Counted from the whole stretch's first letter, positions 1 to 30,735 are shown. The stretch is DNA of 63,075 nucleotides, filler included, from Octopus bimaculoides (GCF_001194135.2; 5 parts of 5 records of this genome joined end to end with filler, not necessarily neighbours in it), one strand, 5' to 3'. The notes: a model not told the origin generated them from the letters alone. Translations and numbers: made by a program.

Positions 1-325
1 GCCACAGCCAAATGACTGAAACAAGTAAAAGATAAAAGACATTCTTCTACTTGTTTCAGTCATTTGTGGCCATGCAGGACTCCATCGGTCACTTTTGTCA
101 AACCGCTAAGTTACAGGGTCATATATACACCAACACCAGTTGTCAGGTGGTGATGAGGGGTGGTGGACAAACACACACACACATGACAGGCTTCTTTCAG
201 TTTCCGTCTACCAAATCCACTCACAAGGTTTTGGTCAGCCCAAGGCTATAGTAGAAGACACTTGTCTGAGGTAGCATGCAGTGGGACTGAACCCAGAACC
301 CTGTGGTTGGGAAGTATATATGTAT

Positions 326-558
326 AGGGTGGCAAGCTGTCAGAATCATTAGCACGCTGGGTGAAATGCTTAGAGTTATTTCGTCTGCCGTTACATTCTG
401 AGTTCAAATTCCACTGCGGTCGACTTTGCCTTTCATCCTTTTGGGGTTGATTAAATAAGTACCAGTTACGTACTGCGGTCAATGTAATCAAATTAATCCC
501 TTTGTCTGTCCTTGTTTGTCCCCTCTGTGTTTAGCCCCTTGTGGGCAATAAAGAAATA
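326..558 (+). mobile_element. SINE family S2 (gagctggcagaatcgttagc...ctgagttcaaattcc...gtcgactttgcctttcatcc)
   Basis: Internal B-box-like GAGTTCAAATTCC. Copies at about 21085-21290(-), 31845-32460 (three in tandem), 36615-36845, 39360-39630(-), 40155-40600 (two), 42460-42675(-), 55020-55170(-). Confidence 0.8.
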
Positions 559-978
559 TGTATATATGTATATTGAAGTTGCATGGCTTAATGGTTAGGG
601 TATTACACTCTTGATTGTGAGATCTTGGGTTTGATTCCCAGACCAAGCATTGCATTGTGTTCTTGAGCAAAGCACTTTATTTCAGGTTGCTCCGTGGTCA
701 TTTCGACATCTGACATGTGGCATATGGTGCACCTGTACAAGTAATGTCAATCTGATAGAGGGAGAGAGCTTGTGTGCACAGAAACATTTGATCCCAATAA
801 GGAAATCGTATGTGAGGTTGTTTGGCAAGAAATTGCCGAACCCTCAAACAGGAGTTTCAGTTGTTGGTTGGGAGAGGGAGGTACAAGACTGAGCAGTGGA
901 GGAAACTGTGGAAGAGATAGACCCAGGAAGACCTGGGATGGGGTTAGGGTTATATGGATGTATGTTAGTATTTATATG

Positions 979-5400: not shown

Positions 5401-5629
5401 CTTTTTTCTTTTTGTATTTTTGTTTTGAATTTATAACAGAAGGTTAGTTTCTAGGAAAATAATAGAAATACGATTCTGAGATGACTGTTTGTGTATGGCC
5501 GGAAAGGAAATAAAAGAAAAAAAGAGAACAATATTGTAAGTCACCTGACCTTTTAGAGTGTGGCTTCAAAAATCTGGAGTCTTTGGGAAATGTTTCTGGT
5601 ACATATATATATACACATATATATACATA

Positions 5630-8337: not shown

Positions 8338-8480
8338 CAGGAGTGGCTGTGTTACCAGCCACATGGTTCCGGGTTCATTCCCACTGCGTGGCACCTTGGG
8401 CAAGTGTCTTCTACTATAGCCTCGGGTTGACCAAAGCCTTGTGAGTGGATTTGGTAGACGGAAACTGAAAGAAGCTTGTC

Positions 8481-8549
<69 letters not shown>

Positions 8550-8758
8550 TATATATGTTTGTGTATCTGTGTTTGTCGCCCCAATATTGCTTGACAACCG
8601 ATGGTGGTGTGTTTACGTCCCCGTAACTTAGCGGTTCGGCAAAAGAGGCCGATAGAATAAGTACTAAGCTTACACAGAATAAGTCCTGGGGTCAATTTGC
8701 TCGACTAAAGACAGTGTTCCAGCATGGCTGCAGTCAAATGACTGAAATAAGTGAAAAA
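8338..8758 (+). mobile_element. Composite SINE: tRNA-like head module S1, (TA)n, then tail module B
   Basis: ggagtggctgtg...ggttcattccc...ccttgggcaagtgtcttctactatagcc...ggaaactgaaagaag, (TA)n, then cttgacaaccgatggtggtgtgtttacgtccccgtaacttagcggttcggc...tgactgaaataag. S1 copies also at about 186-315(-), 7740-7870, 10983-11135(-), 18955-19112, 19630-19800(-), 20080-20222, 22199-22356, 30739-30898, 43684-43825, 48420-48580(-), 61765-61850(-). Confidence 0.85.
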
Positions 8759-8790
8759 GAAAAAAAAAGAGAAATATATATATATATATA

Positions 8791-9591
8791 CGAAGTCTGA
8801 TCAATAAGTATCCGGACTGTTGTCATAGTAACAAAGCTAAAGCACGCAGAGTGAAGCTGCTTGGCAAAGATTGACCTTGAAATCTGCTGTGCATGCACAC
8901 TAAGTTTTAACGCTCTTGCTCATTTCCGCTGTTTACAGCAGTGCTTGGAAGGAAGGTATGTAGAAGGAAGGTGCTTGGAAGCAAGGCCTACGCAAAGTTG
9001 CCGAAAGTGTATGGAGAGGGGTGTATGAGCTGCACTCAAGTCTATGAGTGGTTCAGACGTTTTCAAGATGGCCAAAAAAATGTTGATATTGATGGATGTT
9101 CTGGGAGACACACAGTCAGCAGAACTGAGAGAAACATCACAGACATGCATGCAGCTGTGAGAGGAAATTGTCCAATCACCATCTGTAAGTTATCAGAGCC
9201 AAAATTCCCGTATTTAGTTATGGTTCAGTTCAGTCCATTTTCACTGAAGATTTGGGTTTGGGTTTGGGTATGAGATGCATGTCTGCCAAGCTTGTGTCAA
9301 AACTGCTTTCTGTTGACCAAGAAAACACTCCGGGTTTCAGTTGCACAAGATCTTGATTGTGTCAAGAATGATGAAAACTTTTGGAAAGGTACTGCCAAGC
9401 TTTTGGGAAAATTTGATGCAGATTCTCTGCTCAACTTTCTCTGTGCCATGGTCAGTGCGATGATCATATGCTACACATCTTCCTCCCAAGCACTGCTGTA
9501 AACAGCAGAAGTGAGCTAGAACATAAAGGTCAAACTGTGCTTTAGCTTCATTACTATGGCAAAAGTCCAGATACTTATTGGTCAGACCACA
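8791..9591 (+). mobile_element. Internally deleted mariner element (N-terminal HTH remnant)
   Basis: About 55-bp imperfect TIRs (cgaagtctgatcaataagtatccggact...aagctaaagcac and its inverse), flanked by TA. ORF 8941-9273 contains YAKL.KVYGE.CMS.TQVYEWFRRFQDG...D..SGR, a mariner transposase HTH pattern. Confidence 0.88.
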
Positions 9592-10927
9592 TATATAATC
9601 ATGTGATTGGCAAGACTACTGGATACTTTTATACATCACCACTGATCACAATGTACTTTGTATTGTTTTAGCTTTTGAGTGATGTCACTCTGCTGGCTGA
9701 GAGAGCCGGCGAACATTCCCCCTGATTGGAAGGTTAGTCCATTGCAGGGTGACCCATTTGCAGCTGCATGGACTGGAGCAACATGAAATGAAGTGTCTTG
9801 CTCAAGAACACAATGTGCCACTTGGTCTAGGAATTGAACCCATGATCTAGTGATCATGTGTACACCACCCTAACCCTTGGGACATCCAACGTCACACACT
9901 TGTATATAGGTATGTTGAAGCACCCACTACACTCTCGTTAGGAAGGGCATCCAGCTGTAGAAACTCTGCCAGATCAGATTGGAGTCTGGTGTAACCATCT
10001 GGTTTGCCAGTCCCCAGTCAAATCGTCCAACCCATGCTAGCATGAAAAGCAGAAGTTAAACGACGATGATGATGATANNNNNNNNNNNNNNNNNNNNNNN
10101 NNNNNNNNNNNNNNNNNNNNNNNNNNNNNNNNNNNNNNNNNNNNNNNNNNNNNNNNNNNNNNNNNNNNNNNNNNNNNNNNNNNNNNNNNNNNNNNNNNNN
10201 NNNNNNNNNNCTCTCGTTAGGAAGGGCATCCAGCTGTAGAAACTCTGCCAGATCAGATTGGAGTCTGGTGTAACCATCTGGTTTGCCAGTCCCCAGTCAA
10301 ATCGTCCAACCCATGCTAGCATGAAAAGCAGAAGTTAAACGACGATGATGATGATATATATAGTCACTGATTTTGCAGCAAGCAAAAATGCTAGTTCTAA
10401 AATCTCTCTAAGAGATCAACGCAGTCGTTGTACCAATAAGTAATATTCGTAGCCACTTTAACATGGCTGTCTGTTCGAGCGGACTCTACTGTGATTTTTT
10501 TAACCCCAAGAGGACATCTCCTCTGAGGTGGTTAACAAAGCACAGCTGCAACCGATAAAATTGCGAGCAGGGGAGTGAACTCCTGTCATCCCTTAGCGAC
10601 GAGACCAGTAGATCAGTCCTGGTTTCAGGCTATTTCTACCACTCCTCAGTACTGGACACATCGTCTGCTAGGGGATGTAGGGGTTTGCTCTCCTGTTTTA
10701 TCTTTTACTTGTTTCAGTAATTAGACTGCGGCCATCTTGGGGCACCACAATGAATTTTTTTTAGTTGAATGTATCGACCCCAGTACTATTTTCTTTAAAC
10801 CTGGTTCTTATTCTATTGATCTCTCTTGCTGAACTGCTAAGTTAAGGAGGCATAAACACACAAACACTGGTTTTCAAACAGTGGAGGGAAGTGGGGAACA
10901 AACACAGATATACATACATATGTGCAT

Positions 10928-11469: not shown

Positions 11470-12800
11470 TTTGATAATAGATTTAGGCCCGATGTTTGAA
11501 GGTGAATATTATACTGCTGTGTTCATTGAGACAGTCTATGGATTGCAAAATAGCCATGACCTCAGCTATGTAGAGATCACGCTTATTATCATGACCACTG
11601 TAAGGTTTGGCGTGGGTATGGACCATTTGAGAGTGTAAGGGGTTGACTCAATCGTTAGTTGACTGATAAGTTGAGATAACGATGTACTGATAGATTTTGT
11701 ATGGGATTTGAAGCTATTTGAGTAGTGACTGCTCACCTTAGCTTTGAAGGTGGTGCTGCGTGAATCAGTGTAAAGGTAGTTACAATTGTTGGTTGATACT
11801 GTGCACTTATAAACTATATATTTAGTGAGACAGTGGTTATCTAAAGGACAAGAGGTTGGCCACCTGAAGCTGCATAGGTTTGTAGGGGGTGTTCTGGATG
11901 GGATTGTTATTTAGTGAGGAATTGGTGATTAGTTCTTCATTATAGTTGGTGCTGAGGTTATCAATTATTAAGGGGTTGAGGATGGTGTTGTTGAGAGGTA
12001 TGATATGATAATTATTGTGTCCGTTGGTATCTTCTATGGCAGTGGTTCCCAGACTATGAGCCGCGACCCACTGATGGGTCGTGAACGGAATCCTAGTGGG
12101 TCGCAAAAAGTTATAAAATTACGCATTAGCTTTGATTAACTGCTGTCTATTGAGATAGTTCAAGACTCATGTTTTCAATACCAGACTGGTATTGAAAACG
12201 ACCTTTAACACCCGAAAATTGGTACAGTTCTGGGTGTCTCTTCAAACCCCATACCCAATCATTTCCACCGAAACATTAAAAGTACTTCTCCCTTTCGCGT
12301 CATCTTATAATTGTGAAGCTGAATTTTCAGCAATGGTTGAGATTAAAAGCAAATTTCGAAATAAACTGCAGCTCTCAAATTCTTTACGGCTGAAACTATC
12401 ACGCATTGAACCTGATGTTAATTCTATTAGTGAGTGTAGCAAGAAGCAGGCTCATCCTTCTCACAGGCCTCAATGAAAATGTAATCTGAAATAAATTTGT
12501 TTCTTTCATTAATGTTTTGACCCAGTTGAGTTAAGTGGGTCACCATAAACTGGTGTCATAAATAGTGGGTCACGTCTGTAAAAAGTTTGGGAACCACTGC
12601 TCTATGGTATTCTCTATTATGGCAGGCAGTGTATGTGGTGGTTGTGGTAAATTTAAGGTTTGGGTGGTAGCAGTTGCTCTGTAGTTGTAGTTATGAGGGT
12701 TTGTTTTGTTATGGGGTTCAGTTGGTGTATTGGGTTTATATGTATGGTGCTGGGGCTTATGTTGAATTAGTTTACTTGGGCGGGGGTTAGCCATTAGTGC
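11470..12800 (-). mobile_element. Decayed Penelope-like element fragment (GIY-YIG endonuclease plus low-complexity linker), interrupted by a hAT MITE
   Basis: Minus strand 11875-11484 reads CSFRWPTSCPLDNHCLTKYIVYKCTV...TTFKAKVSSH..SF...STSLSQLISQL...YTLKWSI, then after a frameshift HAKPYSG...AEVMAIL...KHR. This matches the PLE pattern CxC..CPL..CL..VVY / FKxR..H..SF / LS..IW.L / W.I / PY. Confidence 0.75.
12040..12599 (+). mobile_element. Non-autonomous hAT (Buster/Charlie-type) element with remnant C-terminal dimerisation domain
   Basis: TIRs CAGTGGTTCCCA / TGGGAACCACTG; 8-bp TSD ttcTAtgg / ctcTAtgg (7 of 8 match, central TA). ORF 12192-12476 contains FWVSL..YP...LLPFASSYNCEAEFSAM..IKSKFRNKL...LRLKLS.IEPD...QAHPSH. 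Confidence 0.9.
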
Positions 12801-12814
12801 ATTTTGAAGTTTCT

Positions 12815-12873
<59 letters not shown>

Positions 12874-12917
12874 GTATTTTTGTATGTGTGGAAAATGAAT
12901 CCAATTATTGACTAGAA

Positions 12918-13481
12918 ATGTTTATTCCAACCAGAGGTACGCATGTACCAACGCAAACCAGAATTAGAACGAAGATTAAGTGTAGCTCAAGGGTGGATTT
13001 CCTGTCTACCCCAAAGAAACTCCACAAAGATTTTCAAGGACCAAAATCACTTCCTATTAAAGTAAGTCACGCAGCTAAACGTGCAGTTGCATCATGTCGA
13101 ATCGCTGAACTTTCCATTCCAGTAGCACGAAAGGTAACGCCCAAATTTGATAGAGAGAGACCCATAAATTTTCGGCACCGTCGCCGTATTAGTTCAGTTA
13201 GTTCAAGGCTGGAGAAGTTAGCACTTAGCAAGCCACTACATCCAGATTTTGTACCTTGGCAACCAGCCCAAAGGCCCATTAGCAAAGCGATGCTGAATGT
13301 AGCTCCTTCTCAAAGACTTACGGAACTAAGTAAACCAATTATTCGGAAAACGAATCATATAATCTACAACCCTTTCCAAGTGAATCCAGCTACGCAGTCT
13401 GTAAAACCTACCGAGCGAATATTAAATCTAGCAAAACCAAGAAAGTTGCCTCCTAAGGCTGGTTTGAGATTTGCAAGATAA
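12918..13481 (+). CDS. THEG: THEG/SPMAP2-like (testicular haploid expressed repeat) protein, single uninterrupted 187-aa ORF
   Basis: Five repeats of the THEG-type motif [S/T]xRxxxL[S/A]xP[K/R]: SSRVDFLSTPKKLHKDF, SCRIAELSIPVARK, SSRLEKLALSKPLHPDF, SQRLTELSKPIIRK, TERILNLAKPRKLPP. Basic, Pro-rich composition. Family-level recognition only; orthology (THEG vs THEGL) not established. Confidence 0.72.
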   Translation: MFIPTRGTHVPTQTRIRTKIKCSSRVDFLSTPKKLHKDFQGPKSLPIKVSHAAKRAVASCRIAELSIPVARKVTPKFDRERPINFRHRRRISSVSSRLEKLALSKPLHPDFVPWQPAQRPISKAMLNVAPSQRLTELSKPIIRKTNHIIYNPFQVNPATQSVKPTERILNLAKPRKLPPKAGLRFAR

Positions 13482-13775
13482 ATTTATCGAGGTCCTCATT
13501 GTGTTTCATTAAGTCCAAAACTGGAGACAATTGCACTTAGTAAGTTTTTGCAGCTGGACTTCATACCTGAGTAACTCGTCCAAAGACCTACCAGCAGACC
13601 AATATCGAATGTTATTTATTTCACAGGAACTTGTCGACTTGAGTAAACTATATCTTTGGGAAAATGAAGTCAATAACTTATGACCTGGTGAATCCAGCTA
13701 CGCAGATGGTAAATGTCACTGAGTGAATATTGACACTAGGAAAACCAAAGAGGTTGAATGCTAAGGTCACTTTTT
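13482..13775 (+). pseudogene. Decayed tandem copy of the last two THEG repeats of the ORF
   Basis: In frame after the TAA: IYRGPHCVSLSPKLETIALSKFLQLDFIPE* aligns to VSSRLEKLALSKPLHPDFVPW. Further on, VNPATQMVNVTE*ILTLGKPKRLNAK aligns to VNPATQSVKPTERILNLAKPRKLPPK. The 18-mer gtgaatccagctacgcag occurs at both 13380 and 13688. Confidence 0.8.
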
Positions 13776-13899
13776 GAATTTTGTCAAGGCCCTTTTGAAA
13801 TTCATTTGTTAATCATTGTATATTGATCCAAGCAAAACCCCAAAAATCTTTCACTAAGGTTTTTTTCCAATCTTTTTAATATTCAATTTTTGATTGGTG

Positions 13900-16350
13900 A
13901 ATATAGGAGCTAGCAAAATATTGGTGCTAGCCAATAAAAGAATGCTCTAAAAGAATCAGTTCCAACCTTTTTACCCATTAATGTTTTAACTGACCATATC
14001 TGGTCCAAATATTCTACCTGTTTTCTGTTCAAACTAGCCAGATTCAGCCTCTCACACCTACTCTACAATGTTGTTCTAAAAATGAACAATCACATCATTG
14101 AAATCTCAAAGCTACGAGATAATGCAAGATTACTTCCAAATAGTTTGAATAAGTAAGCTTTACATGCTGAAGGGCTAAATTGGTCACATTTCTTAATCTT
14201 TTGAGAACTGCCTTTAGTGAAACCAAGCCTCAAAGAAATCCACTGCTAAGATCACTGTCGATGTTTAATCGCCTTTATGAAGATATTTTAAGTTTTTATT
14301 GAATACTAGCACCAGCAGAATCAAAGAAGAATCCATCATTACAATCACTTTTGAAACTTCTATGAGTTTGTGTCGTTATTCATGTTTTCATTCTTGATTA
14401 TTGCCACTATTGAAATCAAACATCAAAGATTTCTCTGCGCCTTTTCAAGTGTCACCTCTCTGTTGGCATTTTTATTTCATGCCTAGAATATTGATGGCTG
14501 AGAAAACCAAAGATATCCTTCGCTAAGATCACTATTTAAGTCTTGTCTTTTCTATGAAAATATATGTTTTACATATTGAATACTTCACCTCAGTGGAACC
14601 AAAGAAAGTCACCATTGTGACCAGTTTTTAAACTTTGACAATTCTCTATCACCATTCACGTTGAAATCCTTCATTATTGGCATTTGTGGAACCGACCACT
14701 AAAACCTCCATTTCTCTGACCATTTTGAAGTTTCGTCTCCTCTCTGTTGATAATTATGTTTAAGCCTAGAATATTGGCACTTGAGAAAACCTAAGACATC
14801 TAAGATCACTGTTTAAATTTCGTTACTCTATGGAAATATTTCCTGTTTTGTATATTGAATTTTCGGTACCAGCAGAACCAAAGGAACCACCATTGCAATG
14901 ACTTTTTAAGCCCCTGATGACACTAAATCTCTATTATATTTTAATCACTCAGTGTTGGCACTAATGAAACCAACCTCCAAAGATATCCATTGCTCTTCAG
15001 AGCATTTTGAGATTTTATCTCTTCTAAGTTGATAGTTATGTCTGAAGCCTAGAATATTGGCGCTTGAGAAAACCTAAGACGCCTTTATCTAAGATCATTG
15101 TTTAAATTTCGTCACTGTATGAAAATATTCTTGTTTTGCTTATTGAATATTCATCACTGGCAGAACCAAAGACACCATCATTGGAATCACTTTTAAAATG
15201 ACAATGACACTTTGTCACTGTTCAAATTTTAATCCTTGAATGAAACCAAGCACCCAAGATATCCATTGCTCTGATCATTTTGAAATTCCATCTCGTTTAT
15301 GTTCATAGACATGTTTATATTTCAAGTTTGGAATATTGGTGCCAATAGAACCATAAACACACCATCGTGAAAATGATTTTTTAAAAATTGTATTACTTCT
15401 GCATGGACTTACATATTTGAAATTTTGGAAGAATAATGATGAACGAAACAATGGCAGTAGCAAAACCAAAGATATACCAAAATGAATATTCTAAAGAATT
15501 TTATTGTTTCTGTTGGAAGATGCATCTTTGAAAATTTGAAAATACAATGATATAATTGAAATATTGGTACTAGCAAAACCGAAGATATACCATTGTGAAT
15601 ATTATATTTAGAAATATTGTTTTTATACAGACATTGATATTGAATATTTACAAGAACAACAATAAGAGAGCAGCCAAAGATAGAACAATGTGAAGATTAT
15701 TTTCAAGAATTTCAATACATCTTTTGGAGCATATGTATTTGAAACTTTGAAACGGCAATATGATATACAAAATATTGGTACTTGTAAAACCAGAGATATA
15801 TCATTGTGAATATCATTTTTAAAAATCTTGGTTTTTTTTAAAGATATTCCTATTAGAATTCTGGAATTCTGCAAAAACAATGACAAATATACTATTAATT
15901 TTAGCCCTATCAAAAATTCACCAATGTAAAGGTAATTTTGAAGAATTTCATTGCTTCTATTAGGAACAGTCATGTGAAATTTTAGAAGGACAATAGTGGA
16001 CCAAATATAGGTGCCAGTAGGACCAAAAATATACCATCATGTAGAAATTTATATATACTATCATGTAGAAATATACCATCATGTTTGAAATTTTGAAAGG
16101 ATGATGAAGAATAAATTGGCACCAGCAGAACCAAAGACATGCCACAATGAAGATTATTTTTTAAAGAATTCTTGGCTCTTATAGGAACATTCATGTTTGA
16201 AATTTGGAAGGACAATGATGAATAAAATATTGGCTCTGACAGAACCAAAGACATACTGTCGAGAAGATCATTTTTGAAAATTTAATTGGCTCTCAATGTG
16301 TATTTGTGTTTGAAATCTTTAAAAGATTGCAAGAAAATGGTACTAGCCAA
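13900..16350 (+). repeat. Degenerate tandem array (about 283-bp higher-order unit, about 70-110-bp subunits) built on an ATATTGG...A(A/G)AACCAAAG motif
   Basis: Motif starts at 13918, 14488, 14771, 15054, 15333, 15561, 15772 and 16227; spacings 283, 283 and 279 in the central part. The motif translates as (P)RIL(A/V)L(A/x)KPK. Confidence 0.75.
13970..14177. mobile_element. Probable TTAA-type (piggyBac-like) MITE inserted in the THEG-derived array
   Basis: Bounded by ttaccc... and ...tgctgaagggctaa; unrelated to the flanking array units. Ends are degenerate and classification is inferred. Confidence 0.4.
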
Positions 16351-16960
16351 AAGAATAATAAATAATGAATAAAAACCATCACTATGATTAATGTTTTAAA
16401 TTTAATTTCTTCCATTTTGATTTCATGTTTGATGTTGTGAAGAATATTTGTGCTTTTTATCTTTTTTTTTTTCCTTTTTTACTGTTTTTTTTTCTCTTTT
16501 TGCCAAATGTATGCATGGATAAGAATTTCAGAAAAAAAAGGAATGGAACAAAAGTAAAAAAAAAGTGCAAACAAAAAAGCATGAAAGAACAAAAAGACAG
16601 TATAAGACTTAATTATGCAGCAGACAAGCATTTCGTAATCTTTTTGATGTTTTGCTGCCATGCTGTAGATGAAATGGCAAGTTGCTGACATAACTCAGAT
16701 GTAAAGTTAAAATAAGAGAAATTAATGTTTTAAAGTTAAGATACAGAAATCTTTGGATTGTCTTTTTAATTTTACTTCTCTTTTCATTTTATGGTTATAA
16801 ACAAATTAACTATTGTACATGTATATAATTAAAATTATATACAACACGCTCATATATCTTTTAAGAAAGTCTGGAAACATTTTTGATTTTTGCAGTGGAA
16901 TCTAGATAACTTCTTAAATACTTTTCATACTCCAGTGTATCATTGTACATTGGTCTTTCA

Positions 16961-18020
16961 GTCTATCTGTCCACTCAACATCTACACACTGTGTCTATCT
17001 GTCCACTCAACATCTACACACTGTGTCTATCTGTCCACTCAACATCTACACACTGTGTCTATCTGTCCACTNNNNNNNNNNACTCAACATCTACACACTG
17101 TGTCTATCTGTCCACTCAACATCTACACACTGTGTCTATCTGTCCACTCAACATCTACACACTGTGTCTATCTGTCCACTCAACATCTACACCCTGTGTC
17201 TATCTGTCCACAAAACATCTACACCCTGTGTCTATCTGTCCACTCAACATCTACACACTGTGTCTATCTGTCCACTCAACATCTACACACTGTGTCTATC
17301 TGTCCACAAAACATCTACACACTGTGTCTATCTGTCCATTCAGCATATATTCAGTGTGTCTAACTCTCCACTCAACATCTACACAGTCTGTCCACTCAAT
17401 ATCTACGCAGTGTGTCTAACTGTCCACTCAACATCTATACAGTGTCTCTCTGTCCCCTTAATATCTACACACTGTGTCTATCTATGCACTCAATATTTAC
17501 ACACTGTCTCTCTCTGTCCACTCAACATCTGCACAGTGTGTCTATCTGTCCACTCAATATCTACTCACTGTGTCTATTTGTCAACTCAACATCTATACAG
17601 TGTCTCTCTGTCCCCTTAATATCTACACACTGTGTCTATCTATGCACTCAATATCTACACAATGTGTCTATCTGTCCACTCAATATCTACTCACTGTGTC
17701 TATTTGTCCACTCAACATCTACACACTGTGTCTATCTATGCATTCAATATCTACACAATGTGTCTATCTGTCCACTCAATATCTACTCACTGTGTCTATC
17801 TGTCCACTCAAGATCTACACCTTGTGTCTATCTGTCCACTCAACATCTACACACTGTGTCTATTTGTCCACTCAACATCTACACACTGTGTCTATTTGTC
17901 CACTCAACATCTACACACTGTGTCTCTCTGTCCACTCAACATCTACACACTGTGTCTATCTCTCCACTCGACACCTACTCACTGTGTCTATCTGTCCACT
18001 CAACATCTACACACTGTGTC
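16961..18020. repeat. 32-bp minisatellite, about 33 units
   Basis: Unit actcaacatctacacactgtgtctatctgtcc; this explains the periodic STQHLHTVSICPLNIYTLCLSVHSTSTHCVYL ORFs. Confidence 0.95.
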
Positions 18021-19337
18021 TTTCTACATATTCTGTGTGTGTACAATGAAGATCTCCTCACTGTTCATTTGTTCCTGTCCAATAAACATCTTCCCTCTAT
18101 GCCATAAACATTGTCATTCATTCCCAAAATACCTGATTCCCTTTTCTCATCCTCTGTATCTAATATGTTAATTGGAANNNNNNNNNNNNNNNNNNNNNNN
18201 NNNNNNNNNNNNNNNNTCTGTCCACTCAACATCTACACACTGTGTCTATTTGTCCACTCAACATCTACACACTGTGTCTCTCTGTCCACTCAACATCTAC
18301 ACACTGTGTCTATCTCTCCACTCGACACCTACTCACTGTGTCTATCTGTCCACTCAACATCTACACACTGTGTCTTTCTACATATTCTGTGTGTGTACAA
18401 TGAAGATCTCCTCACTGTTCATTTGTTCCTGTCCAATAAACATCTTCCCTCTATGCCATAAACATTGTCATTCATTCCCAAAATACCTGATTCCCTTTTC
18501 TCATCCTCTGTATCTAATATGTTAATTGGAAAACACATCATACCTTTCTCCTGTCTACTAACTGCCCAGGGCAAAAATGCTATATGACAGTTGAAATTAT
18601 CAGTTTTATCGTAATTACTCTCTGTGACCTTTTGACTTTTGCAAGCCAATTTAACATCTAAATAGTGAACTTTATATGCCATGTTTCCATTTCTGTTTTT
18701 CTTGGATAGTTCCTACTAGGATGGGCATCCAGCTCTAAAAAACTTGCCAAAGTGACCTTGCCCATGCTGGTGCCACATAAAAAGCGCTCAGCTTACTCTG
18801 CAGTATGTTTGGTGTTAGGAAGGGCATCCAGCCATAAAGGCCATATGGAAGCAGACACAGACATCTGGTGCAATCGTCTACCTGGCCAGCACCTGTCAAA
18901 CCGTCCAACCCATGCCAGCATGGAAGGCAGATGTTAAATGACGGTGACGTTGATATGGGTGTGTGTGTTTGTGGTAGGAAGTGTGTTTCCCATGCACAAG
19001 CTATTAGGTTCAGTCCCACTGCGTGGCACCTTGAGCAAGCGTCTTCTATTTTAGCCCCTGGCCAATGAAAGCCTTGTGAGTGGATTTGCTTGACAGAAAC
19101 TGGAAAGAGCTTGTGTATGTGTGTGTATTCTTTTTGTGTTTGACTGTGGCCATGCTGGAGCACCGCCTTTAATCAAGCAAATTGATCCCAGGACTTATTC
19201 TTTGTAAGCCTAGTACTTATTCTATCGGTCTTTTTTGCCAAATCACTAAGCTATGGTGTCATAAATACACCAACATCGGTTGTGAAGCGATTGTGGGGTG
19301 ACAAACACAGACACACAAACATATACACACACATACG

Positions 19338-19382
<45 letters not shown>

Positions 19383-19447
19383 TGATAGAAAAGGTAAGAC
19401 AACAAAAGAAAGAAAGAGACCTCTCTATTATGTAAATAGAGGAATTT

Positions 19448-19600
19448 ATCTGTAAATAATATGTGACAATTATTCGGTAGCCATGATAAAACTCCNNNNN
19501 NNNNNAGATAACTGAAGAGATGGCGGCATGGGTTTCCGCCCCGACATACGAAACTCAGAGTTTTATCATGGCTACCGAATAATTGTCACATATTATTTAC

Positions 19601-19606
<6 letters not shown>
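19448..19606. mobile_element. Fold-back element family B (47-bp perfect inverted arms) with a hammerhead motif
   Basis: atctgtaaat...gataaaactc (19448-19494) is the exact inverse of 19560-19606; there is a 10-N gap inside. Confidence 0.7.
19507..19567 (+). ncRNA. Candidate minimal type-I hammerhead ribozyme (family B)
   Basis: Stem I GATAA/TTATC; core CTGAAGA 19512-19518; stem II closed by G19519:C19549 with ggcgg/ccgcc; GAAA 19550-19553; helix III CTC-a-GAG; U16.1 at 19561, H17=U at 19562. Confidence 0.55.
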
Positions 19607-19641
<35 letters not shown>

Positions 19642-19808
19642 TACATACGACGGACTTCTTTCAGTTTCTGTCTACCAAATCCACTCACAAGGCTTTGGTC
19701 GGTCTGAAGCTATAGAAGAAGACACTTGCCTAAGGTGCTACGCGGTTGGACTGAACCAAGAACCATGTGGTTGGGAAGCTAGATTCTTACTACAAAGCCA
19801 CTCTTGCA

Positions 19809-19844
<36 letters not shown>

Positions 19845-20644
19845 TGTGTTTGTGTTTGTCCCACCTCCACCGCAACCACACGAGAACTAGGGTTCATATG
19901 TTTATCTATCCTTGACTTAGCAGTTCAGCATAAGAGACTGATGGAATGAGTACCAGGCTTAAAAATAAGTAGTTGGGTTGATGCATTCAACTGAAGTTCT
20001 TTAGGGTAGTGCCCCAGCATGGCTACTGTCTAATAACTGAAACAAAGATGAAAAAAATAAATAGTTAAGTATAGATATGTACATGTGGCTGTGTGGTTGA
20101 GAAGCTTGTTTCCCAACCATGTGGTCTTGTGTTCAATCCCACTGCATGGCACCTTGGGCAAATATCTTCAACTAAAGCCTTGTAAGTGAATTTGGTTGAA
20201 GGAAACTGAAAGAAGCCTGTCAAGGATATCATCATCACTGTTTAACTTCCACCTTCCATGCTGGCATGGGTTGAATGGTTTGACAGGAGCCAGCCAGGCA
20301 CCATATTTCTGTGTCAGTTTTGGCAGGGTTTTTACGGCTGGATGCCCTTCCTAACTCTAACCACCCTGCAGAGTGGACTGAGTCCTTTTTACATGGCACC
20401 AGCACAGGTGAAGTCAGTTTTGGCAATGTTTTTTTTACAACTGGATACCCTTCCAAATTCCAGACACTTTACAGTGTGGACTTGATGATTTTTACACAGC
20501 ACCAATACTGGCAGGGTCACCAAGTAACTTGCGAGACAAATATCCTTTGAGATAGGAGGGGGCATTGGAGGGGGTTATCTTGTGTCAGATGAGGAAAGGT
20601 TAGAGTGTGAGTTTGTGTCTGTTTGTGTTGTGTTTTTCTCTCAC

Positions 20645-21483
20645 CACTGGATGGATGAACTCTGCTATAGAAAGCTATGCATGTTTCAGTAAGATTCAGT
20701 AGCGTACCCCAAATCTACATAACTCAAGAATGGATGTCAGTCAATATTTATGACCATGTAGCACTAAACTTGTGACCTCTAAACTTGCCAAATGCAAAGC
20801 CCATGTGCTACCACTGGGATAGGAGCCTTGGTGAAAAAAAACTAATTAACATCTTTGCTATATTGTGGCTCCATTGAAGGCAGCCATCATCCAGGTGATG
20901 TCCGAAACGAATAAGGGTTATATAGGTTTGGGGGAAGGTACTGAACCTTATTAAAACGTGTAGGCTTCCACTGCATACTTCATCCTTCTAGGGGGTAGGG
21001 ACAAACACAGCACAAAGAGGCATACACTCACACACACTAACACATCATCATCATCATCATCATCATTTAACATCTTATTTCTTTATTGCCCACAAGGGGA
21101 CAAACAAGGACAGACAAAGGGATTAAGTCGATTACATCGACCCCAGTGCATAACTGTTACTTTATTTATCGACCCCGAAAGGATGAAAGGCAAAGTCGAC
21201 TTCGGCGGAATTTGAACTCAGAACGTAACAGCAGACAAAATACCGCTAAGCATTTTGCCCGGCGTGCTAACGATTCTACCAGCTTGCTGCCATTATTTGA
21301 CATCTGTTGTCTATGCTGGCATGGGTTGGATGGTTTGATTATGGCTCGTGAGCTGAGGGGCTGTGCCAGACTCCAGTCTTCTTTCAGTTTCCATCAACTA
21401 TATTCACTCACGAGGCAAGCATTTCAGTGATTCTGGTCCTGCGTTGAATCGGTCATCAAAGCTGAAGGCAGATTCATAGAATA
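20645..21483 (+). mobile_element. Old maT (DD37D) fragment split by SINE/microsatellite insertions
   Basis: MFQ*DS...TQEWMSVNIYDHVALNL*PLNLPNAKPMCYHW (about 20680-20815), PLKAAIIQVMSETNK (about 20870-20910), and AFQ*FWSCVESVIKAEGRFIE* (21416-21483), the typical C-terminus. Confidence 0.6.
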
Positions 21484-22351
21484 ATCTTAGAAGGAAAGCT
21501 TATTGGGAATAAGGAGTAGAGTGGAGTAAAGTACGAGAGAAAAGGGCTGGAGAAGAATGGTTTTGTTGCTGTAGAGAGAGGACATGACTACTCACATTTT
21601 AGAAGAGATTTTAAAATTTACTAAAACTCTGAGTTGAAACCCTGACAGGCTGGAAGCTACATTTCATTCTGCTGTAGATGGATAGCCAAACTAATTAATT
21701 TTAACTTGTATCTAAAAACAATTTTTATTCAGAAATGATTAATAGCAACAGAAGCAGTATTAATACCAAATGGCAATATTTATATCCAACTAAATGTGGA
21801 GGTCCTGCTAGAACACAAAGTACTGCATTATTTACTTTGAGAGGGTCTCTCATAAGGACTTGTGGTGCTTAAAAGCAGTCGTAATTATATTGTTGGCAGA
21901 AGAGAATTTTTTGCTACGGCCACCAGAACTTCCGGATCCCATGATTTTACTCTGCTGTGGGTTCCTCAGTGACAGATGTCCAGCAGTGTGATAACAGTCA
22001 GATTTCTCATCAACGACGTATAGAATATCAATGCCTATTCAAGCCTTTAGTGAAATAATTTTGTCCTTATTAAGCTGATGTTTGGGACATAAATTAAAAC
22101 GAAATTTTGATGGAAGTTTTTTATTTAGATCACTTTAACCCTTTTGTTACCATACTGTGTGCTCATGGGTGCTGGAGACATGTAAAAAGTACCCATACTA
22201 GGAGTGGCTGTGTGGTAAGTAGCTTGCTTACCAACCACGTGGTTCTGGGTTCAGTCCCATTGTGTGGGACCTTGGGCAAGTGTTTTCTTCTACAGCCTTG
22301 GGCTGATCAAAACCTTGTGAGTGGATTTGGTAGACAGAAACTGAAAGTAGC

Positions 22352-22387
<36 letters not shown>

Positions 22388-24870: not shown

Positions 24871-25829
24871 GTATTTTTCTTTTGGAATTCCTCATATTGA
24901 AGTTTGTTGGCGTTCTTGCCTTTTCATTTGCGTTTGTGTGTGGGAGTGGTGGTGTAAAGAAATCAGCAGGTATGAAATGAATATTGATGTAACCATGATA
25001 TTGTGTTGATCTGATGAGCTAGTCTTCTGTACCTGTATTAACTTGTAATATGTACAATATTACTGTTGTTGTTGGCACTCCGTCGCTTACGACGACGAGG
25101 GTTCCAATTGATCCGATCAACGGAACAGCCTGCTCGTGAAATTAATGTGCAAGTCGCTGAGCACTCCACAGACACGTGTACCCTTAACGTAGTTCTCAGG
25201 GATATTCAGCGTGACACAGTGTGACAAGGCTGACCCGGAATCTTGAGGTTAGTAGGCATTCTTGATCTGCTGAATTTGGTAGATGGAAACTGAAAGAAGC
25301 CCATCGCATATATATCTATATATATTTATGTGTGTCTTTGTGTCTGTGTTTGTTCCCCTCCAGCACCGCTTGACAACCAATGTTGGTGTGTTTACGTCCC
25401 CACTCTTTACTCATGCTTTTTTAGCAATGCCCTCCCACTTATATTATGACTTCTGTAGCACAAGGGTATGCTCTCACACTCTCCCATCCAATTTATATTC
25501 TGATCCCCATCTCTTATGAGTATGCCCAACATTTCACCACCATCTCTCTCCTGCTCCCTCTTGCTGTGTCCCGGTCTCTCACTCTTTCTCTTGCTTTTCC
25601 CTCAGGCTCGGTAACCATGTATCTCCTTTAAAGTAGCACAGCTGTTTCTGTCCTCATTCTCTCTCTCTCTCTCTCTCTGGCCAGGTAACCATGTATCTCC
25701 TTTACAGCGAGACACCTGTTTCTGTCTCTCTGTCTCACTATAACTTTTCATCATCTGGTACAAGATTATCTCCTCCAATGCCACATCCCCTTTCAAAGGA
25801 TCTTTGTCTTGCAAGTTACTTGGTGACCC

Positions 25830-26320
25830 TGCCACTGCTGGTGCCACGTAAAATGCATCCAGTCCACACTATGAAGTGGTTGGCATTTGGAAGGGCATCC
25901 AGCTGTAAAAACCTTTCCAAAACTGACCTTGCCTGTGCTGGTGCCACATAAAAAGCATCCAGTCCACTTTACGGGGCGGTTGGTGTTAGGAAGGGCATCC
26001 GGCCATTAAAACTATGCCAAACTGAGCTCACCTGTACTGGTGCCATGTAAAAAGCACTCAGTCCACTCTACGGGGCAGTTGGTGTTAGGAAGGGCATCCA
26101 GCTGTAAAAACCATGCCAAAACTGACCTTCCCTGTGCTGGTGTTACGTATAAAGCGCTCAGTCCCGTCTACTGGGTGTTTGCTGTTAGGAAGGGCATCCA
26201 GCAGTAAAAACCATGCCAAAACAGACACTGAGGCCTAGTGCTGTCTTCTGCCTAGCCAATCCTTGTCAAACCATCCAACCCATGCCGGCATAGAAAAAGA
26301 CTTTAAACGGTGATGATAAT
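25830..26320 (+). mobile_element. SINE family S4 with four tandem about 100-bp internal units and (GAT)n tail
   Basis: Units start at about 25837, 25937, 26035 and 26135, each containing ttaggaagggcatccagc. Shorter versions at 2583-2818(-), 9918-10076, 18715-18952, 20232-20600(-), 24470-24590. RTE-like tail is an inference. Confidence 0.8.
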
Positions 26321-29748: not shown

Positions 29749-30561
29749 TATATGTATGTATATCTAATTGAATAAGTTGAAGTCAACAAGTAGAAGTATG
29801 GTTGGACATTTATTTGCAATCACTACAATTGTTTCTATGCAACATAGTTCTTCATGCTTGCAGGTACTTTATTATGCAACCATTTCTCTGCATTATGAGT
29901 TGCAAAGTTGACCTTCCTGGAATTTGAACTCAGAACATAAAGGGTTGAAAGAATCTTTAGTAAGGATTCTGCCAGCTTGCCACAAAGTGGAACGTTAATG
30001 GCATCAATTTTACAATTTTTTTTTTTCAGAAAGAACTACAAAAGGCATGGACATTGTTTCCTGTTCAGTACTCACCAAAAAAACCATGGCCACCACCCAC
30101 AAAGAAGTATTACTTGGAAGTACATACAATACTTTTGCTAAAAGCTTTAGGTGCCTCTATAGTAATGAGCAGGTGTGGACCCATCCCCTGTCCCTTGGGT
30201 GACTCACTACTTGTTGCAGCAGAATACTCTGGATGTGACAACTGAAAGAAAAGAGAGAGGGTTGTAGTAGCACTTGGGTGGTACACGTTTACAGCTGAGC
30301 AGACTGGAGTAATGTGAAATGGAGTCTTACTTGGTGCCAGGTTTTTGCTCATTCAGAATGTGACAAGTGAAAGGAGAGAGGACTGGATGATTGGGCAGAC
30401 TGGAGCAATGTGAAATGGAGTGTCTTGCTTAAGGATACCGTGTGCCATTCCAGGGCCAGGAATTGAACCGGTGATCTTCTGATTGTGAGCACAATGCTGC
30501 TAATCAATCAAACAAATATAGAAATGCTTACAGTTTAACCTGGAAAGCTGAAAGAATATCA

Positions 30562-30586
30562 ACAACAACAACAACAACCATAGCTG

Positions 30587-30633
<47 letters not shown>

Positions 30634-30703
30634 GTAATTCCGAAAAGAATGACTGCCAGAACTGTAGCAACAGCAACAACTACAACAACAATTGTGCCCA
30701 CAA

Positions 30704-30735
<32 letters not shown>
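30562..30735. repeat. Compound trinucleotide microsatellite (ACA)n ... (ATC)n
   Basis: Direct reading. Other tracts: (CA)n 10928-10981, (CT)n/(GATA)n 31615-31738, (ATT)n 35838-35898, (AAC)n(TAC)n 36530-36606, (TAG)n 38226-38281, (AAAG)n 52964-53022, (GATA)n 54413-54484, and numerous (TA)n at gap edges. Confidence 0.95.

What the first reader, a model, noticed from the sequence alone, without database searches (positions are those of the whole stretch)
13482..16350. Fossil THEG coding-repeat array converted into non-coding satellite downstream of the ORF
Seen: the reading frame continues past the TAA with a recognisable THEG repeat. The recurring DNA motif of the next about 2.5 kb translates on the same strand as ILVLAKPKIYH (15561), KILVLVKPEIYH (15772), ILALTEPK (16227) and PRILAL.KPK (14771, 15054), mirroring ERILNLAKPRK in the ORF. 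Three central units share the same extra base (gagaaaacc) and two successive spacings are 283 bp, not a multiple of 3. Inference: the gene once encoded a much longer microtubule-binding repeat protein, was truncated, and the dead repeats kept amplifying after frameshifting.
Basis: partly seen in the sequence, partly recalled or inferred. Interest (0 to 1): 0.7.

Follow-up and report, generated by a model that had tools for sequence, protein, structure and literature searches.

The report
Decayed tandem copies of a gene's tail
Downstream of an octopus sperm-tail (THEG) gene lie about two dozen old, decayed tandem copies of the gene's 3' end (last repeat, stop codon and following non-coding DNA); they are an ordinary duplication fossil, not the remains of a once longer protein.

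Summary
Window 12935-13481 is the last exon of an Octopus bimaculoides THEG-like gene (Pfam THEG, E=1.7e-31). It is followed by about 2.9 kb of head-to-tail, same-strand repeats carrying the quoted motifs, the shared GAGAAAACC and the 283-bp spacings.

The stretch has three parts:
- 13482-13790 is a 63-66% identical, frameshifted copy of coding 13169-13481 (E=8e-29).
- 14183-15327 holds one partial and three full 283-bp higher-order units.
- 15320-16350 holds 108-116-bp monomers.

A DNA profile built only from units beyond 13900 finds the held-out pseudo-copy (E about 1e-5). In 92 kb of other Octopus DNA it finds only the 3' ends of 11 paralogous THEG exons. A full-monomer profile aligns across last repeat, stop codon and about 60 nt of 3' flank (E down to 2e-8).

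So each unit straddles a stop codon and was never an in-frame protein extension. THEG homologues end right after this repeat (76 of 79). The "truncated longer protein" reading is therefore not supported; local origin from the gene's end is.

Units are 60-80% alike, more diverged than O. bimaculoides-O. vulgaris orthologous DNA (85-88%), so this is an old single-locus array, not a homogenised satellite.

The parts
5495..5535 (+). Exon 1 of the THEG-like gene (MAGKEIKEKKRTIL), followed by a GTAAGT donor
   Evidence: Found by translation search for the N-terminus of P0001. Sequence read.
12935..13481 (+). Last exon: acceptor AG at 12933-34; five THEG repeat cores at 12990, 13098, 13206, 13314 and 13416; stop TAA at 13479-81
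   Evidence: Pfam THEG E=1.7e-31. Repeat cores listed. Splice junction reconstructs P0001.
13454..13456 (+). Probable relic of the ancestral stop codon (ccTAAgg), now out of frame; the ORF runs 8 codons further
   Evidence: Alignment with 11 paralogous exon ends: the spacer between AACCAAAGA and TAAG is 20 nt here against 21 nt in the paralogues. This is an inference.
13169..13481 (+). Parent segment of the proximal duplication (coding repeats 3-5 plus tail); ATAA lies at both breakpoints (13165-68 and 13478-81)
   Evidence: blastn 13193-13477 against 13505-13788, E=8e-29. Global alignment. Breakpoint sequence read.
13482..13790 (+). Pseudo-copy of repeats 3-5 plus tail: 63-66% identical, three frames needed, several stops
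   Evidence: (D15). The family HMM gives only about 0 bits at 13506-13607 and 13688-13765.
13795..13934 (+). One or two strongly decayed terminal-module units (cores near 13820 and 13916)
   Evidence: nhmmer: 13795-13873 E=2.3e-7 with the all-array profile, E about 0.04 when held out; 13915-13931 not significant.
13935..14182 (+). About 250 bp with no recognisable unit (origin unknown); contains AATAAA at 13933-38
   Evidence: No hit with any profile. AATAAA list.
14183..15327 (+). Higher-order block: one partial and three full 283-bp units (14479, 14762, 15045), each of three monomers (A ILALEKT type, B AEPK type, C ETKP/MKP type); copies 69-80% identical
15320..16350 (+). Monomer block: about 9 units of 108-116 bp, partly as 211-bp dimers; keeps the ancestral 21-nt spacer; 28% GC
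16357..16373 (+). Two AATAAA motifs just past the last unit; candidate poly(A) signals if the whole array is 3' UTR

Best explanation
The array is a locus-specific, old and decaying tandem repeat. It was made by repeated local tandem duplication of the 3'-terminal module of this THEG-like gene.

Each module of about 110 bp is made of:
- the last about 40 nt of coding sequence (the ..RILxLAKPK.. half-repeat and short tail);
- the stop codon;
- about 60-70 nt of the 3' flank.

The live gene's own end is in effect unit 0 of the array. Because each copy begins inside the last repeat and carries a stop, the copies were non-coding from birth and the protein was never longer.

Inferred order of events:
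1. Early amplification of monomers that still show the ancestral KPK-x-Y-x spacing seen in the paralogues (distal block, 15320-16350).
2. A 1-nt deletion in the gene's end, which put the old stop out of frame and extended the ORF by 8 codons.
3. Further copying of the altered end, and amplification of a three-monomer 283-bp unit.
4. A 313-bp duplication of repeats 3-5 plus tail (13482-13790), with ATAA microhomology at both breakpoints. The TAA sits at the junction, so the protein was left unchanged.

The likely mechanism is replication slippage or unequal exchange. All copies then drifted neutrally towards the AT-rich local background. Homology and anatomy are shown; the order of events and the mechanism are inferred.
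For: Gene and pseudo-copy:
- Gene identity and model.
- Pseudo-copy of coding 13169-13481: blastn E=8e-29, aligned.

Units form one family on one strand:
-.

Link to the coding end:
- Held-out test: a profile from units beyond 13900 finds 13722-13782 at E=8e-6 to 1.6e-5. Off-array noise starts at E=0.8. The best place in the live CDS is exactly repeat 5.
- Reverse test: a profile of copy 1 plus copy 2 gives 13 sub-threshold hits. 11 are array units, all at profile positions about 250-312 (repeat 5 plus tail); none aligns to repeats 3-4.

Independent loci:
- The same array-only profile, run on 92 kb of O. vulgaris and O. bimaculoides DNA, hits only the 3' ends of the 11 THEG terminal exons found by tblastn (E=7e-7 to 0.09).
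- A core-to-core monomer profile aligns over positions 3-104 of 114, through the annotated stop codon and about 60 nt beyond it (E=2e-8, 8e-8, 8.5e-7, 5.7e-6, 2e-5).
- Tail-only test against the paralogue tails: 13 of 13 units score above the null, P<2e-5.

Conserved C-terminus and non-coding state:
- 76 of 79 homologues end 16 or fewer residues after the last repeat. The PDB THEGL match ends at 447 of 450.
- Stops occur about every 17 codons in all frames, and GC falls 42% to 38% to 33% to 28% along the array.

Layering and age:
- Shared indel states define proximal and distal layers. The higher-order-unit profile also matches 13725-13843 at E=1.2e-8.
- Copies are 63-80% identical, against 85-88% for orthologous O. 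bimaculoides-O. vulgaris DNA.
Against: - Direct similarity of array units to the live gene's own repeat 5 is weak: nhmmer E about 2 and 18/25 in the core.
- Similarity to the gene's own tail is absent (P=0.76). The link runs through the pseudo-copy and the paralogues.
- No protein-profile signal exists beyond 13790.
- Distal monomers resemble paralogue ends more than the adjacent gene, so an ectopic origin from a paralogue cannot be excluded.
- The interleaving of A-type (derived spacer) and B-type units inside the 283-bp unit does not fit a simple 'older is more distal' order.
- Genome-wide copy number, the orthologous locus in other species, the reads over the TAA and transcription could not be examined.
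Confidence: 0.8

Rival explanations
1. One reading: the gene once encoded a much longer THEG repeat protein, a stop truncated it, and the dead coding repeats then became a satellite.
For: - The unit length (95-116 bp) is close to the coding repeat period (102-108 bp).
- The motif translates as ILxLxxPK on the coding strand.
- The first 30 codons after the TAA stay open and in frame.
Against: - Units align to last repeat + stop + about 60 nt of 3' flank of the paralogous exons, so each carries its own stop and non-coding DNA.
- Only repeat 5 is represented; repeats 3 and 4 are not.
- The C-terminus directly after this repeat is conserved in 76 of 79 homologues and in all 11 Octopus paralogue exons.
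- The 313-bp pseudo-copy has ATAA at both breakpoints, with the TAA at the junction, so it was post-stop from the start.
- No THEG protein-profile signal exists beyond 13790.
Confidence: 0.04
2. The units belong to a dispersed repeat family (a transposon- or MITE-associated tandem repeat, or a true multi-locus satellite) that merely sits next to the gene.
For: - The window is full of dispersed repeats that hit L001 and L002 many times.
- The whole genome could not be searched.
Against: - No copy exists in the other 28 kb of the window on either strand.
- In 92 kb of other Octopus DNA the profiles hit only THEG exon ends.
- blastn of 13482-16400 finds nothing there, while neighbouring dispersed repeats give dozens of hits.
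- No flanking inverted repeats.
- The units are homologous to a conserved coding end, which gives them a local parent.
Confidence: 0.06
3. The distal monomers were seeded from the 3' end of a paralogous THEG exon by ectopic duplication or conversion, not from this gene's own end.
For: - Monomers score higher against paralogue ends (up to 29 bits) than against the adjacent live repeat 5 (about 4 bits).
- They share the 21-nt spacer and ATACCA with the paralogues.
Against: - The same pattern is expected if this gene's end once looked like the paralogues and later diverged through the 1-nt deletion and substitutions.
- The array is contiguous with the gene, on the same strand and in phase with it. 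The proximal units share this gene's derived state.
- No paralogue exon body or other paralogue flank is present in the window.
Confidence: 0.1

Closest known systems
Birth stage of tandem repeats or satellite DNA by de novo local duplication, with higher-order repeats (model of Ruiz-Ruano et al. as summarised in the review PMC5615363)
   Same: Head-to-tail units at one locus, seeded from an arbitrary pre-existing sequence. Later co-amplification of adjacent monomers gave a higher-order unit (283 bp = 3 monomers; 211 bp = 2).
   Different: There is no sign of spread to other loci, no large copy number and no homogenisation: units are 60-80% alike. The parent sequence is known and is a gene's coding end plus stop plus 3' flank.
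Partial tandem gene duplicates (unprocessed pseudogene fragments)
   Same: 13482-13790 is a directly adjacent, disabled copy of part of the parent exon, 63-66% identical.
   Different: It is followed by about 20 further copies of only the terminal module. The junction falls exactly at the stop codon, so the parent protein was untouched.
Tandem cluster of THEG terminal exons in Octopus (L002, O. bimaculoides CM046624.1; L001, O. vulgaris OX597837.1)
   Same: The same exon family was duplicated in tandem in the same genus. The array units are homologous to the ends of these exons.
   Different: There the whole exon with about 1 kb of flank was copied (blocks of about 1.4 kb or more, 67-80% alike). 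The copies stay open and are annotated as alternative last exons. No ~110-bp array follows them.
Gene-derived testis-linked tandem repeats such as Stellate / Su(Ste) in Drosophila (from memory, not tested here)
   Same: Tandem repeats descended from part of a testis-expressed protein-coding gene.
   Different: Those repeats are young, homogeneous, numerous and act through piRNAs. Here the copies are old and diverged, and no expression data exist.
Minisatellites (VNTRs) in 3' untranslated regions (general knowledge)
   Same: Tandem units of tens to about 100 bp lying directly after a stop codon.
   Different: Typical VNTRs have near-identical units and vary in length between individuals. These units are strongly diverged, which argues against current instability.

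Membership tests
THEG repeat protein (Pfam PF14912), the live gene | Profile match above the curated cut-off | tested here: met
   108.8 bits against a cut-off of 27; E=1.7e-31; 3 stretches. PDB relatives are 8otz THEGL (E=9e-12) and 8snb THEG-like.
THEG repeat protein, the array 13482-16350 as coding or ex-coding repeats | Protein-profile similarity of its translations to THEG repeats | tested here: not met
   Pfam on three frames with X at stops gave no THEG hit. A family HMM with filters off gave only about 0 bits at 13506-13607 and 13688-13765 and nothing beyond 13790.
THEG repeat protein, the array as a former in-frame extension of the protein | Units consist of coding repeat only, without stop or UTR material | tested here: not met
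   The monomer profile aligns through the stop codon and about 60 nt of the 3' flank of the paralogous exons. Tail test P<2e-5.
Satellite DNA | Head-to-tail tandem arrangement on one strand | tested here: met
   About 22 units, all on the + strand, spaced 86-116 bp.
Satellite DNA | Higher-order repeat structure (optional feature) | tested here: met
   283-bp units: three full and one partial, 69-80% alike.
Satellite DNA | Sequence homogeneity between units (concerted evolution) | tested here: not met
   Monomers are 60-76% alike and higher-order units 69-80% alike. This is more diverged than orthologous DNA of two Octopus species, 85-88%.
Satellite DNA | Large copy number or long arrays, often at several loci | tested here: inconclusive
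   2.9 kb here. No other copy in 28 kb of the window or in 92 kb of two other loci. The whole genome was not searchable.
Unprocessed partial pseudogene (13482-13790) | Significant DNA homology to the parent CDS, plus disabling changes | tested here: met
   E=8e-29, 66% over 292 nt. Stops and two frame changes.
Transposon- or MITE-associated tandem repeat | Dispersed copies; terminal inverted repeats around the array | tested here: not met
   No dispersed copies in the data at hand. No flanking inverted repeats apart from microsatellite palindromes. The sample of genome searched was small.
Known structured RNA family | Rfam match at the gathering score | tested here: not met
   No match in the whole piece.

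The most novel reading that the evidence does not exclude
The whole array is transcribed as a long 3' UTR of a spermatid mRNA, with a poly(A) signal at 16357 or 16368. Its roughly 20 related motifs, which are homologous to the 3' ends of all Octopus THEG paralogue exons, would then act as a multi-site platform. That platform could bind an RNA-binding protein or yield small RNAs that co-regulate the THEG family during spermiogenesis. Nothing here tests this. The neutral-looking decay and the 60-80% identity argue against it.
Probability: 0.05. Interest if true: 0.65.

Novelty: new member of a known kind. Interest (0 to 1): 0.3.

Why it matters
This is a clean, well-resolved case in which the parent of a tandem array can be named to the base: a gene's last half-repeat, stop codon and proximal 3' flank.

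- The array works as a layered fossil record. It preserves an older state of the gene's C-terminus (KPK-x-Y-x then stop, as in the paralogues). It suggests that the present tail (PKAGLRFAR) arose by a 1-nt deletion that read into former 3' UTR.
- It warns annotators that peptide-like motifs after a stop need not mean a truncated protein.
- Together with the paralogous cluster of alternative last exons, it shows that the THEG terminal exon is a recurrent target of tandem duplication in Octopus.
- It does not bear on any major open question.

Tried and rejected
- Pfam scan of the three forward frames of 13482-16400 with X at stops: no THEG hit.
- Six-frame search with a family HMM built from 146 homologues, filters off: only the real exon, two near-zero pieces of the pseudo-copy, and a low-complexity minus-strand hit at 12824-12630 that I regard as spurious.
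- DNA profile of the five coding repeats: the coding repeats are too diverged from each other at DNA level, and array hits were not significant.
- Direct blastn of the CDS against the array: only the pseudo-copy is significant.
- Unit tails against the live gene's own tail: no similarity (P=0.76).
- Exact-protein look-ups of P0001 and of the window ORF: not on record, so the locus could not be placed in the newer assemblies and no orthologous locus was obtained.
There was therefore no read check of the TAA, no RNA-seq and no read laying.
- Rfam: no match.
- Inverted-repeat search for transposon-like ends: nothing.
- Pfam on the 116-aa minus-strand ORF inside the array: nothing.
- Literature searches for THEG in octopus and for THEGL in doublet microtubules returned nothing relevant. 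One search was rejected for syntax.

Full report
**The gene**

The piece comes from Octopus bimaculoides. ORF 12918-13481 is 100% identical to a UniRef protein named 'testicular haploid expressed gene protein-like' (P0001, 195 aa). It matches Pfam THEG at 108.8 bits, E=1.7e-31.

The N-terminus of P0001 (MAGKEIKEKKRTIL) is encoded at 5495-5535 and is followed by GTAAGT. An AG at 12933-34 joins it in frame, so the gene has a 7.4-kb intron and a last exon at 12935-13481.

The exon holds five R[ILV]xxL..P cores spaced 108, 108, 108 and 102 nt. Solved-structure relatives are chains named THEGL (8otz) and THEG-like (8snb).

**Checking the observation**

Every quoted peptide, the GAGAAAACC shared by the units at 14479, 14762 and 15045, and the two 283-bp spacings are present.

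A 25-nt core (ATATTGGCACTAGCAGAACCAAAGA, up to 7 mismatches) occurs 12 times. All copies are on the + strand between 13419 and 16227, and none lies elsewhere in the piece. Self-comparison peaks at 283/289/276 bp in 14200-15320 and at 211 and 112-114 bp in 15320-16350.

**Anatomy of the downstream stretch**

- **13482-13790** is a copy of coding 13169-13481 (repeats 3-5 plus tail). blastn gives E=8e-29 at 66% identity over 292 nt; the global alignment gives 63%. Three frames are needed to follow it, and it has several stops.
  - Both breakpoints carry ATAA (cATAA|ATTTTCGG at 13164-76; gATAA|ATTTATCGAGG at 13477-92).
  - The duplication junction therefore coincides with the stop codon and left the protein unchanged. 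I read this as microhomology-mediated tandem duplication (inference).
- **13795-13934** holds one or two very decayed units.
- **13935-14182** has no recognisable unit.
- **14183-15327** is one partial and three full 283-bp higher-order units of three monomers each. The copies are 69-80% alike.
- **15320-16350** holds about nine monomers of 108-116 bp.

All six frames are closed about every 17 codons. GC falls from 42% in the CDS to 28% in the distal block.

**Is the array related to the coding sequence?**

Protein profiles say nothing beyond 13790. DNA profiles do.

- A profile iterated only on units beyond 13900, with 12900-13900 masked, finds the held-out pseudo-repeat 13722-13782 at E=8e-6 to 1.6e-5. 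The first off-array hit is at E=0.8. The best place in the live CDS is exactly repeat 5, although that hit is not significant (E about 2).
- Conversely, a profile of copy 1 plus copy 2 yields 13 sub-threshold hits. 11 of them are array units, all aligned to profile positions about 250-312, which is repeat 5 plus tail. None aligns to repeats 3 or 4.

**Independent loci: the decisive evidence**

The nearest homologues turned out to be Octopus paralogues, and their loci could be fetched: L001 from O. vulgaris and L002 from the O. bimaculoides chromosome assembly. tblastn finds six and five tandem THEG terminal exons there, 34-45% identical to P0001. In L002 four annotated isoforms share one start and end at four different copies.

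- The array-only profile, run on these 92 kb (both strands), hits only the 3' ends of those 11 exons (E=7e-7 to 0.09).
- A monomer profile cut from core to next core (114 nt) aligns over positions 3-104, from the last repeat through the annotated stop codon to about 60 nt beyond it. The E-values are 2e-8, 8e-8, 8.5e-7, 5.7e-6 and 2e-5.
- A tail-only comparison that excludes the core gives 13 of 13 units above a conservative null (P<2e-5). The live gene's own tail and the pseudo-copy's tail do not stand out.

So the repeated unit is the terminal module: about 40 nt of CDS, the stop codon, then about 60-70 nt of 3' flank.

Each unit carried a stop and non-coding DNA, so the array was never an in-frame continuation.

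Independently, 76 of 79 homologues whose best alignment reaches the query's last repeat end within 16 residues of it (median 3-4). All Octopus paralogues end ..AKPKxxxL-stop.

The multiple alignment shows that the live CDS, the pseudo-copy and the proximal units (13820, 14488, 14771, 15054) share a spacer 1 nt shorter between AACCAAAGA and TAAG than the paralogues and the distal monomers. That puts the old TAA (13454-56) out of frame and lets the ORF run 8 codons further to 13479. The protein was, if anything, extended. This last point rests on a short alignment and is an inference (my confidence is about 0.6).

The same character suggests layers: distal monomers predate the deletion, and proximal units and the pseudo-copy postdate it. 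The higher-order-unit profile also matches 13725-13843 (E=1.2e-8), which ties the A and B monomers to the proximal units. The interleaving of A and B types means the order is not strictly linear.

**Age and nature**

Orthologous, mostly non-coding stretches of L002 and L001 are 85-88% identical over 3-4 kb. Array copies are 60-80% alike, and the pseudo-copy is 63-66% identical to its parent. The duplications therefore predate the split of the two species. Nothing indicates recent amplification or homogenisation.

This is a fossil single-locus tandem array, not a satellite in the usual sense. The review PMC5615363 describes how any sequence can seed a tandem repeat at one locus and how higher-order units arise. 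This case fits that first stage without later spread.

**Dispersed-family test**

- No unit occurs in the other 28 kb of the window.
- blastn of the window against L001 and L002 gives dozens of hits for other segments (dispersed repeats) but none for 13482-16400.
- No terminal inverted repeats flank the array.
- The whole genome could not be searched.

**Not testable here**

The TAA, the assembly of the array and its transcription are therefore unverified. AATAAA occurs at 13933 and again at 16357 and 16368, which allows either a short or a long 3' UTR. Rfam finds nothing.

**Verdict**

Descent from the gene's end is confirmed at DNA level. The 'truncated longer protein' reading is rejected, and 'satellite' is overstated. 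It is an ordinary product of tandem duplication with an unusually legible history. Interest is modest.

Noticed in passing
L002 13773-24303 (O. bimaculoides CM046624.1) and L001 37493-51937 (O. vulgaris OX597837.1): A paralogous THEG locus carries five (L002) or six (L001) tandem copies of the whole terminal exon. In L002 four isoforms share one start and end at different copies, so they look like alternative last exons. Blocks are 67-80% alike within a species and 85-88% alike between species.
   Followed up: partly
window 13440-13481: Compared with 11 paralogue exon ends, the gene's end has a 1-nt shorter spacer. The ancestral TAA (13454-56) is out of frame and the ORF gains 8 codons (PKAGLRFAR), probably from former 3' UTR.
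   Followed up: partly
window 8941-9273 (+), inside the intron: An ORF fragment matches the HTH domain of Mos1/mariner transposase (PF17906, E=3e-7). It is probably a decayed mariner-like element.
   Followed up: partly
window 16961-18379: A 32-bp minisatellite (GTCTATCTGTCCACTCAACATCTACACACTGT) has about 33 plus 5 copies at 80-90% identity. It is interrupted by assembly gaps and lies about 600 bp after the array.
   Followed up: no
window 25824-26226: A 100-bp unit is repeated four times (81% matches), also read as a 199-bp period.
   Followed up: no
window 81-563, 1820-2044, 2583-2816, 8352-8768, 9918-10355, 18770-20400, 21117-22378: These segments hit L001 and L002 many times at 70-93% identity, so they are dispersed repeat families. 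Several carry the recurring ORF-like string YDGLLSVSVYQIHSQGFG.
   Followed up: no
window 12815-12870: A (TG)n(TA)n microsatellite lies about 65 bp upstream of the last exon's splice acceptor.
   Followed up: no
window 13935-14182: About 250 bp inside the array match no unit profile. The length is close to one 283-bp unit, so this may be a fully decayed copy, an insertion or original flank.
   Followed up: partly
window 12630-12824 (-): The THEG family HMM gives a weak minus-strand hit (7.9 bits) in a proline/histidine/asparagine-rich translation next to the microsatellite. I take it as a compositional artefact.
   Followed up: no
window 30546-30735: Runs of (CAA)n and (CAT)n trinucleotide repeats lie near the end of the piece.
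   Followed up: no
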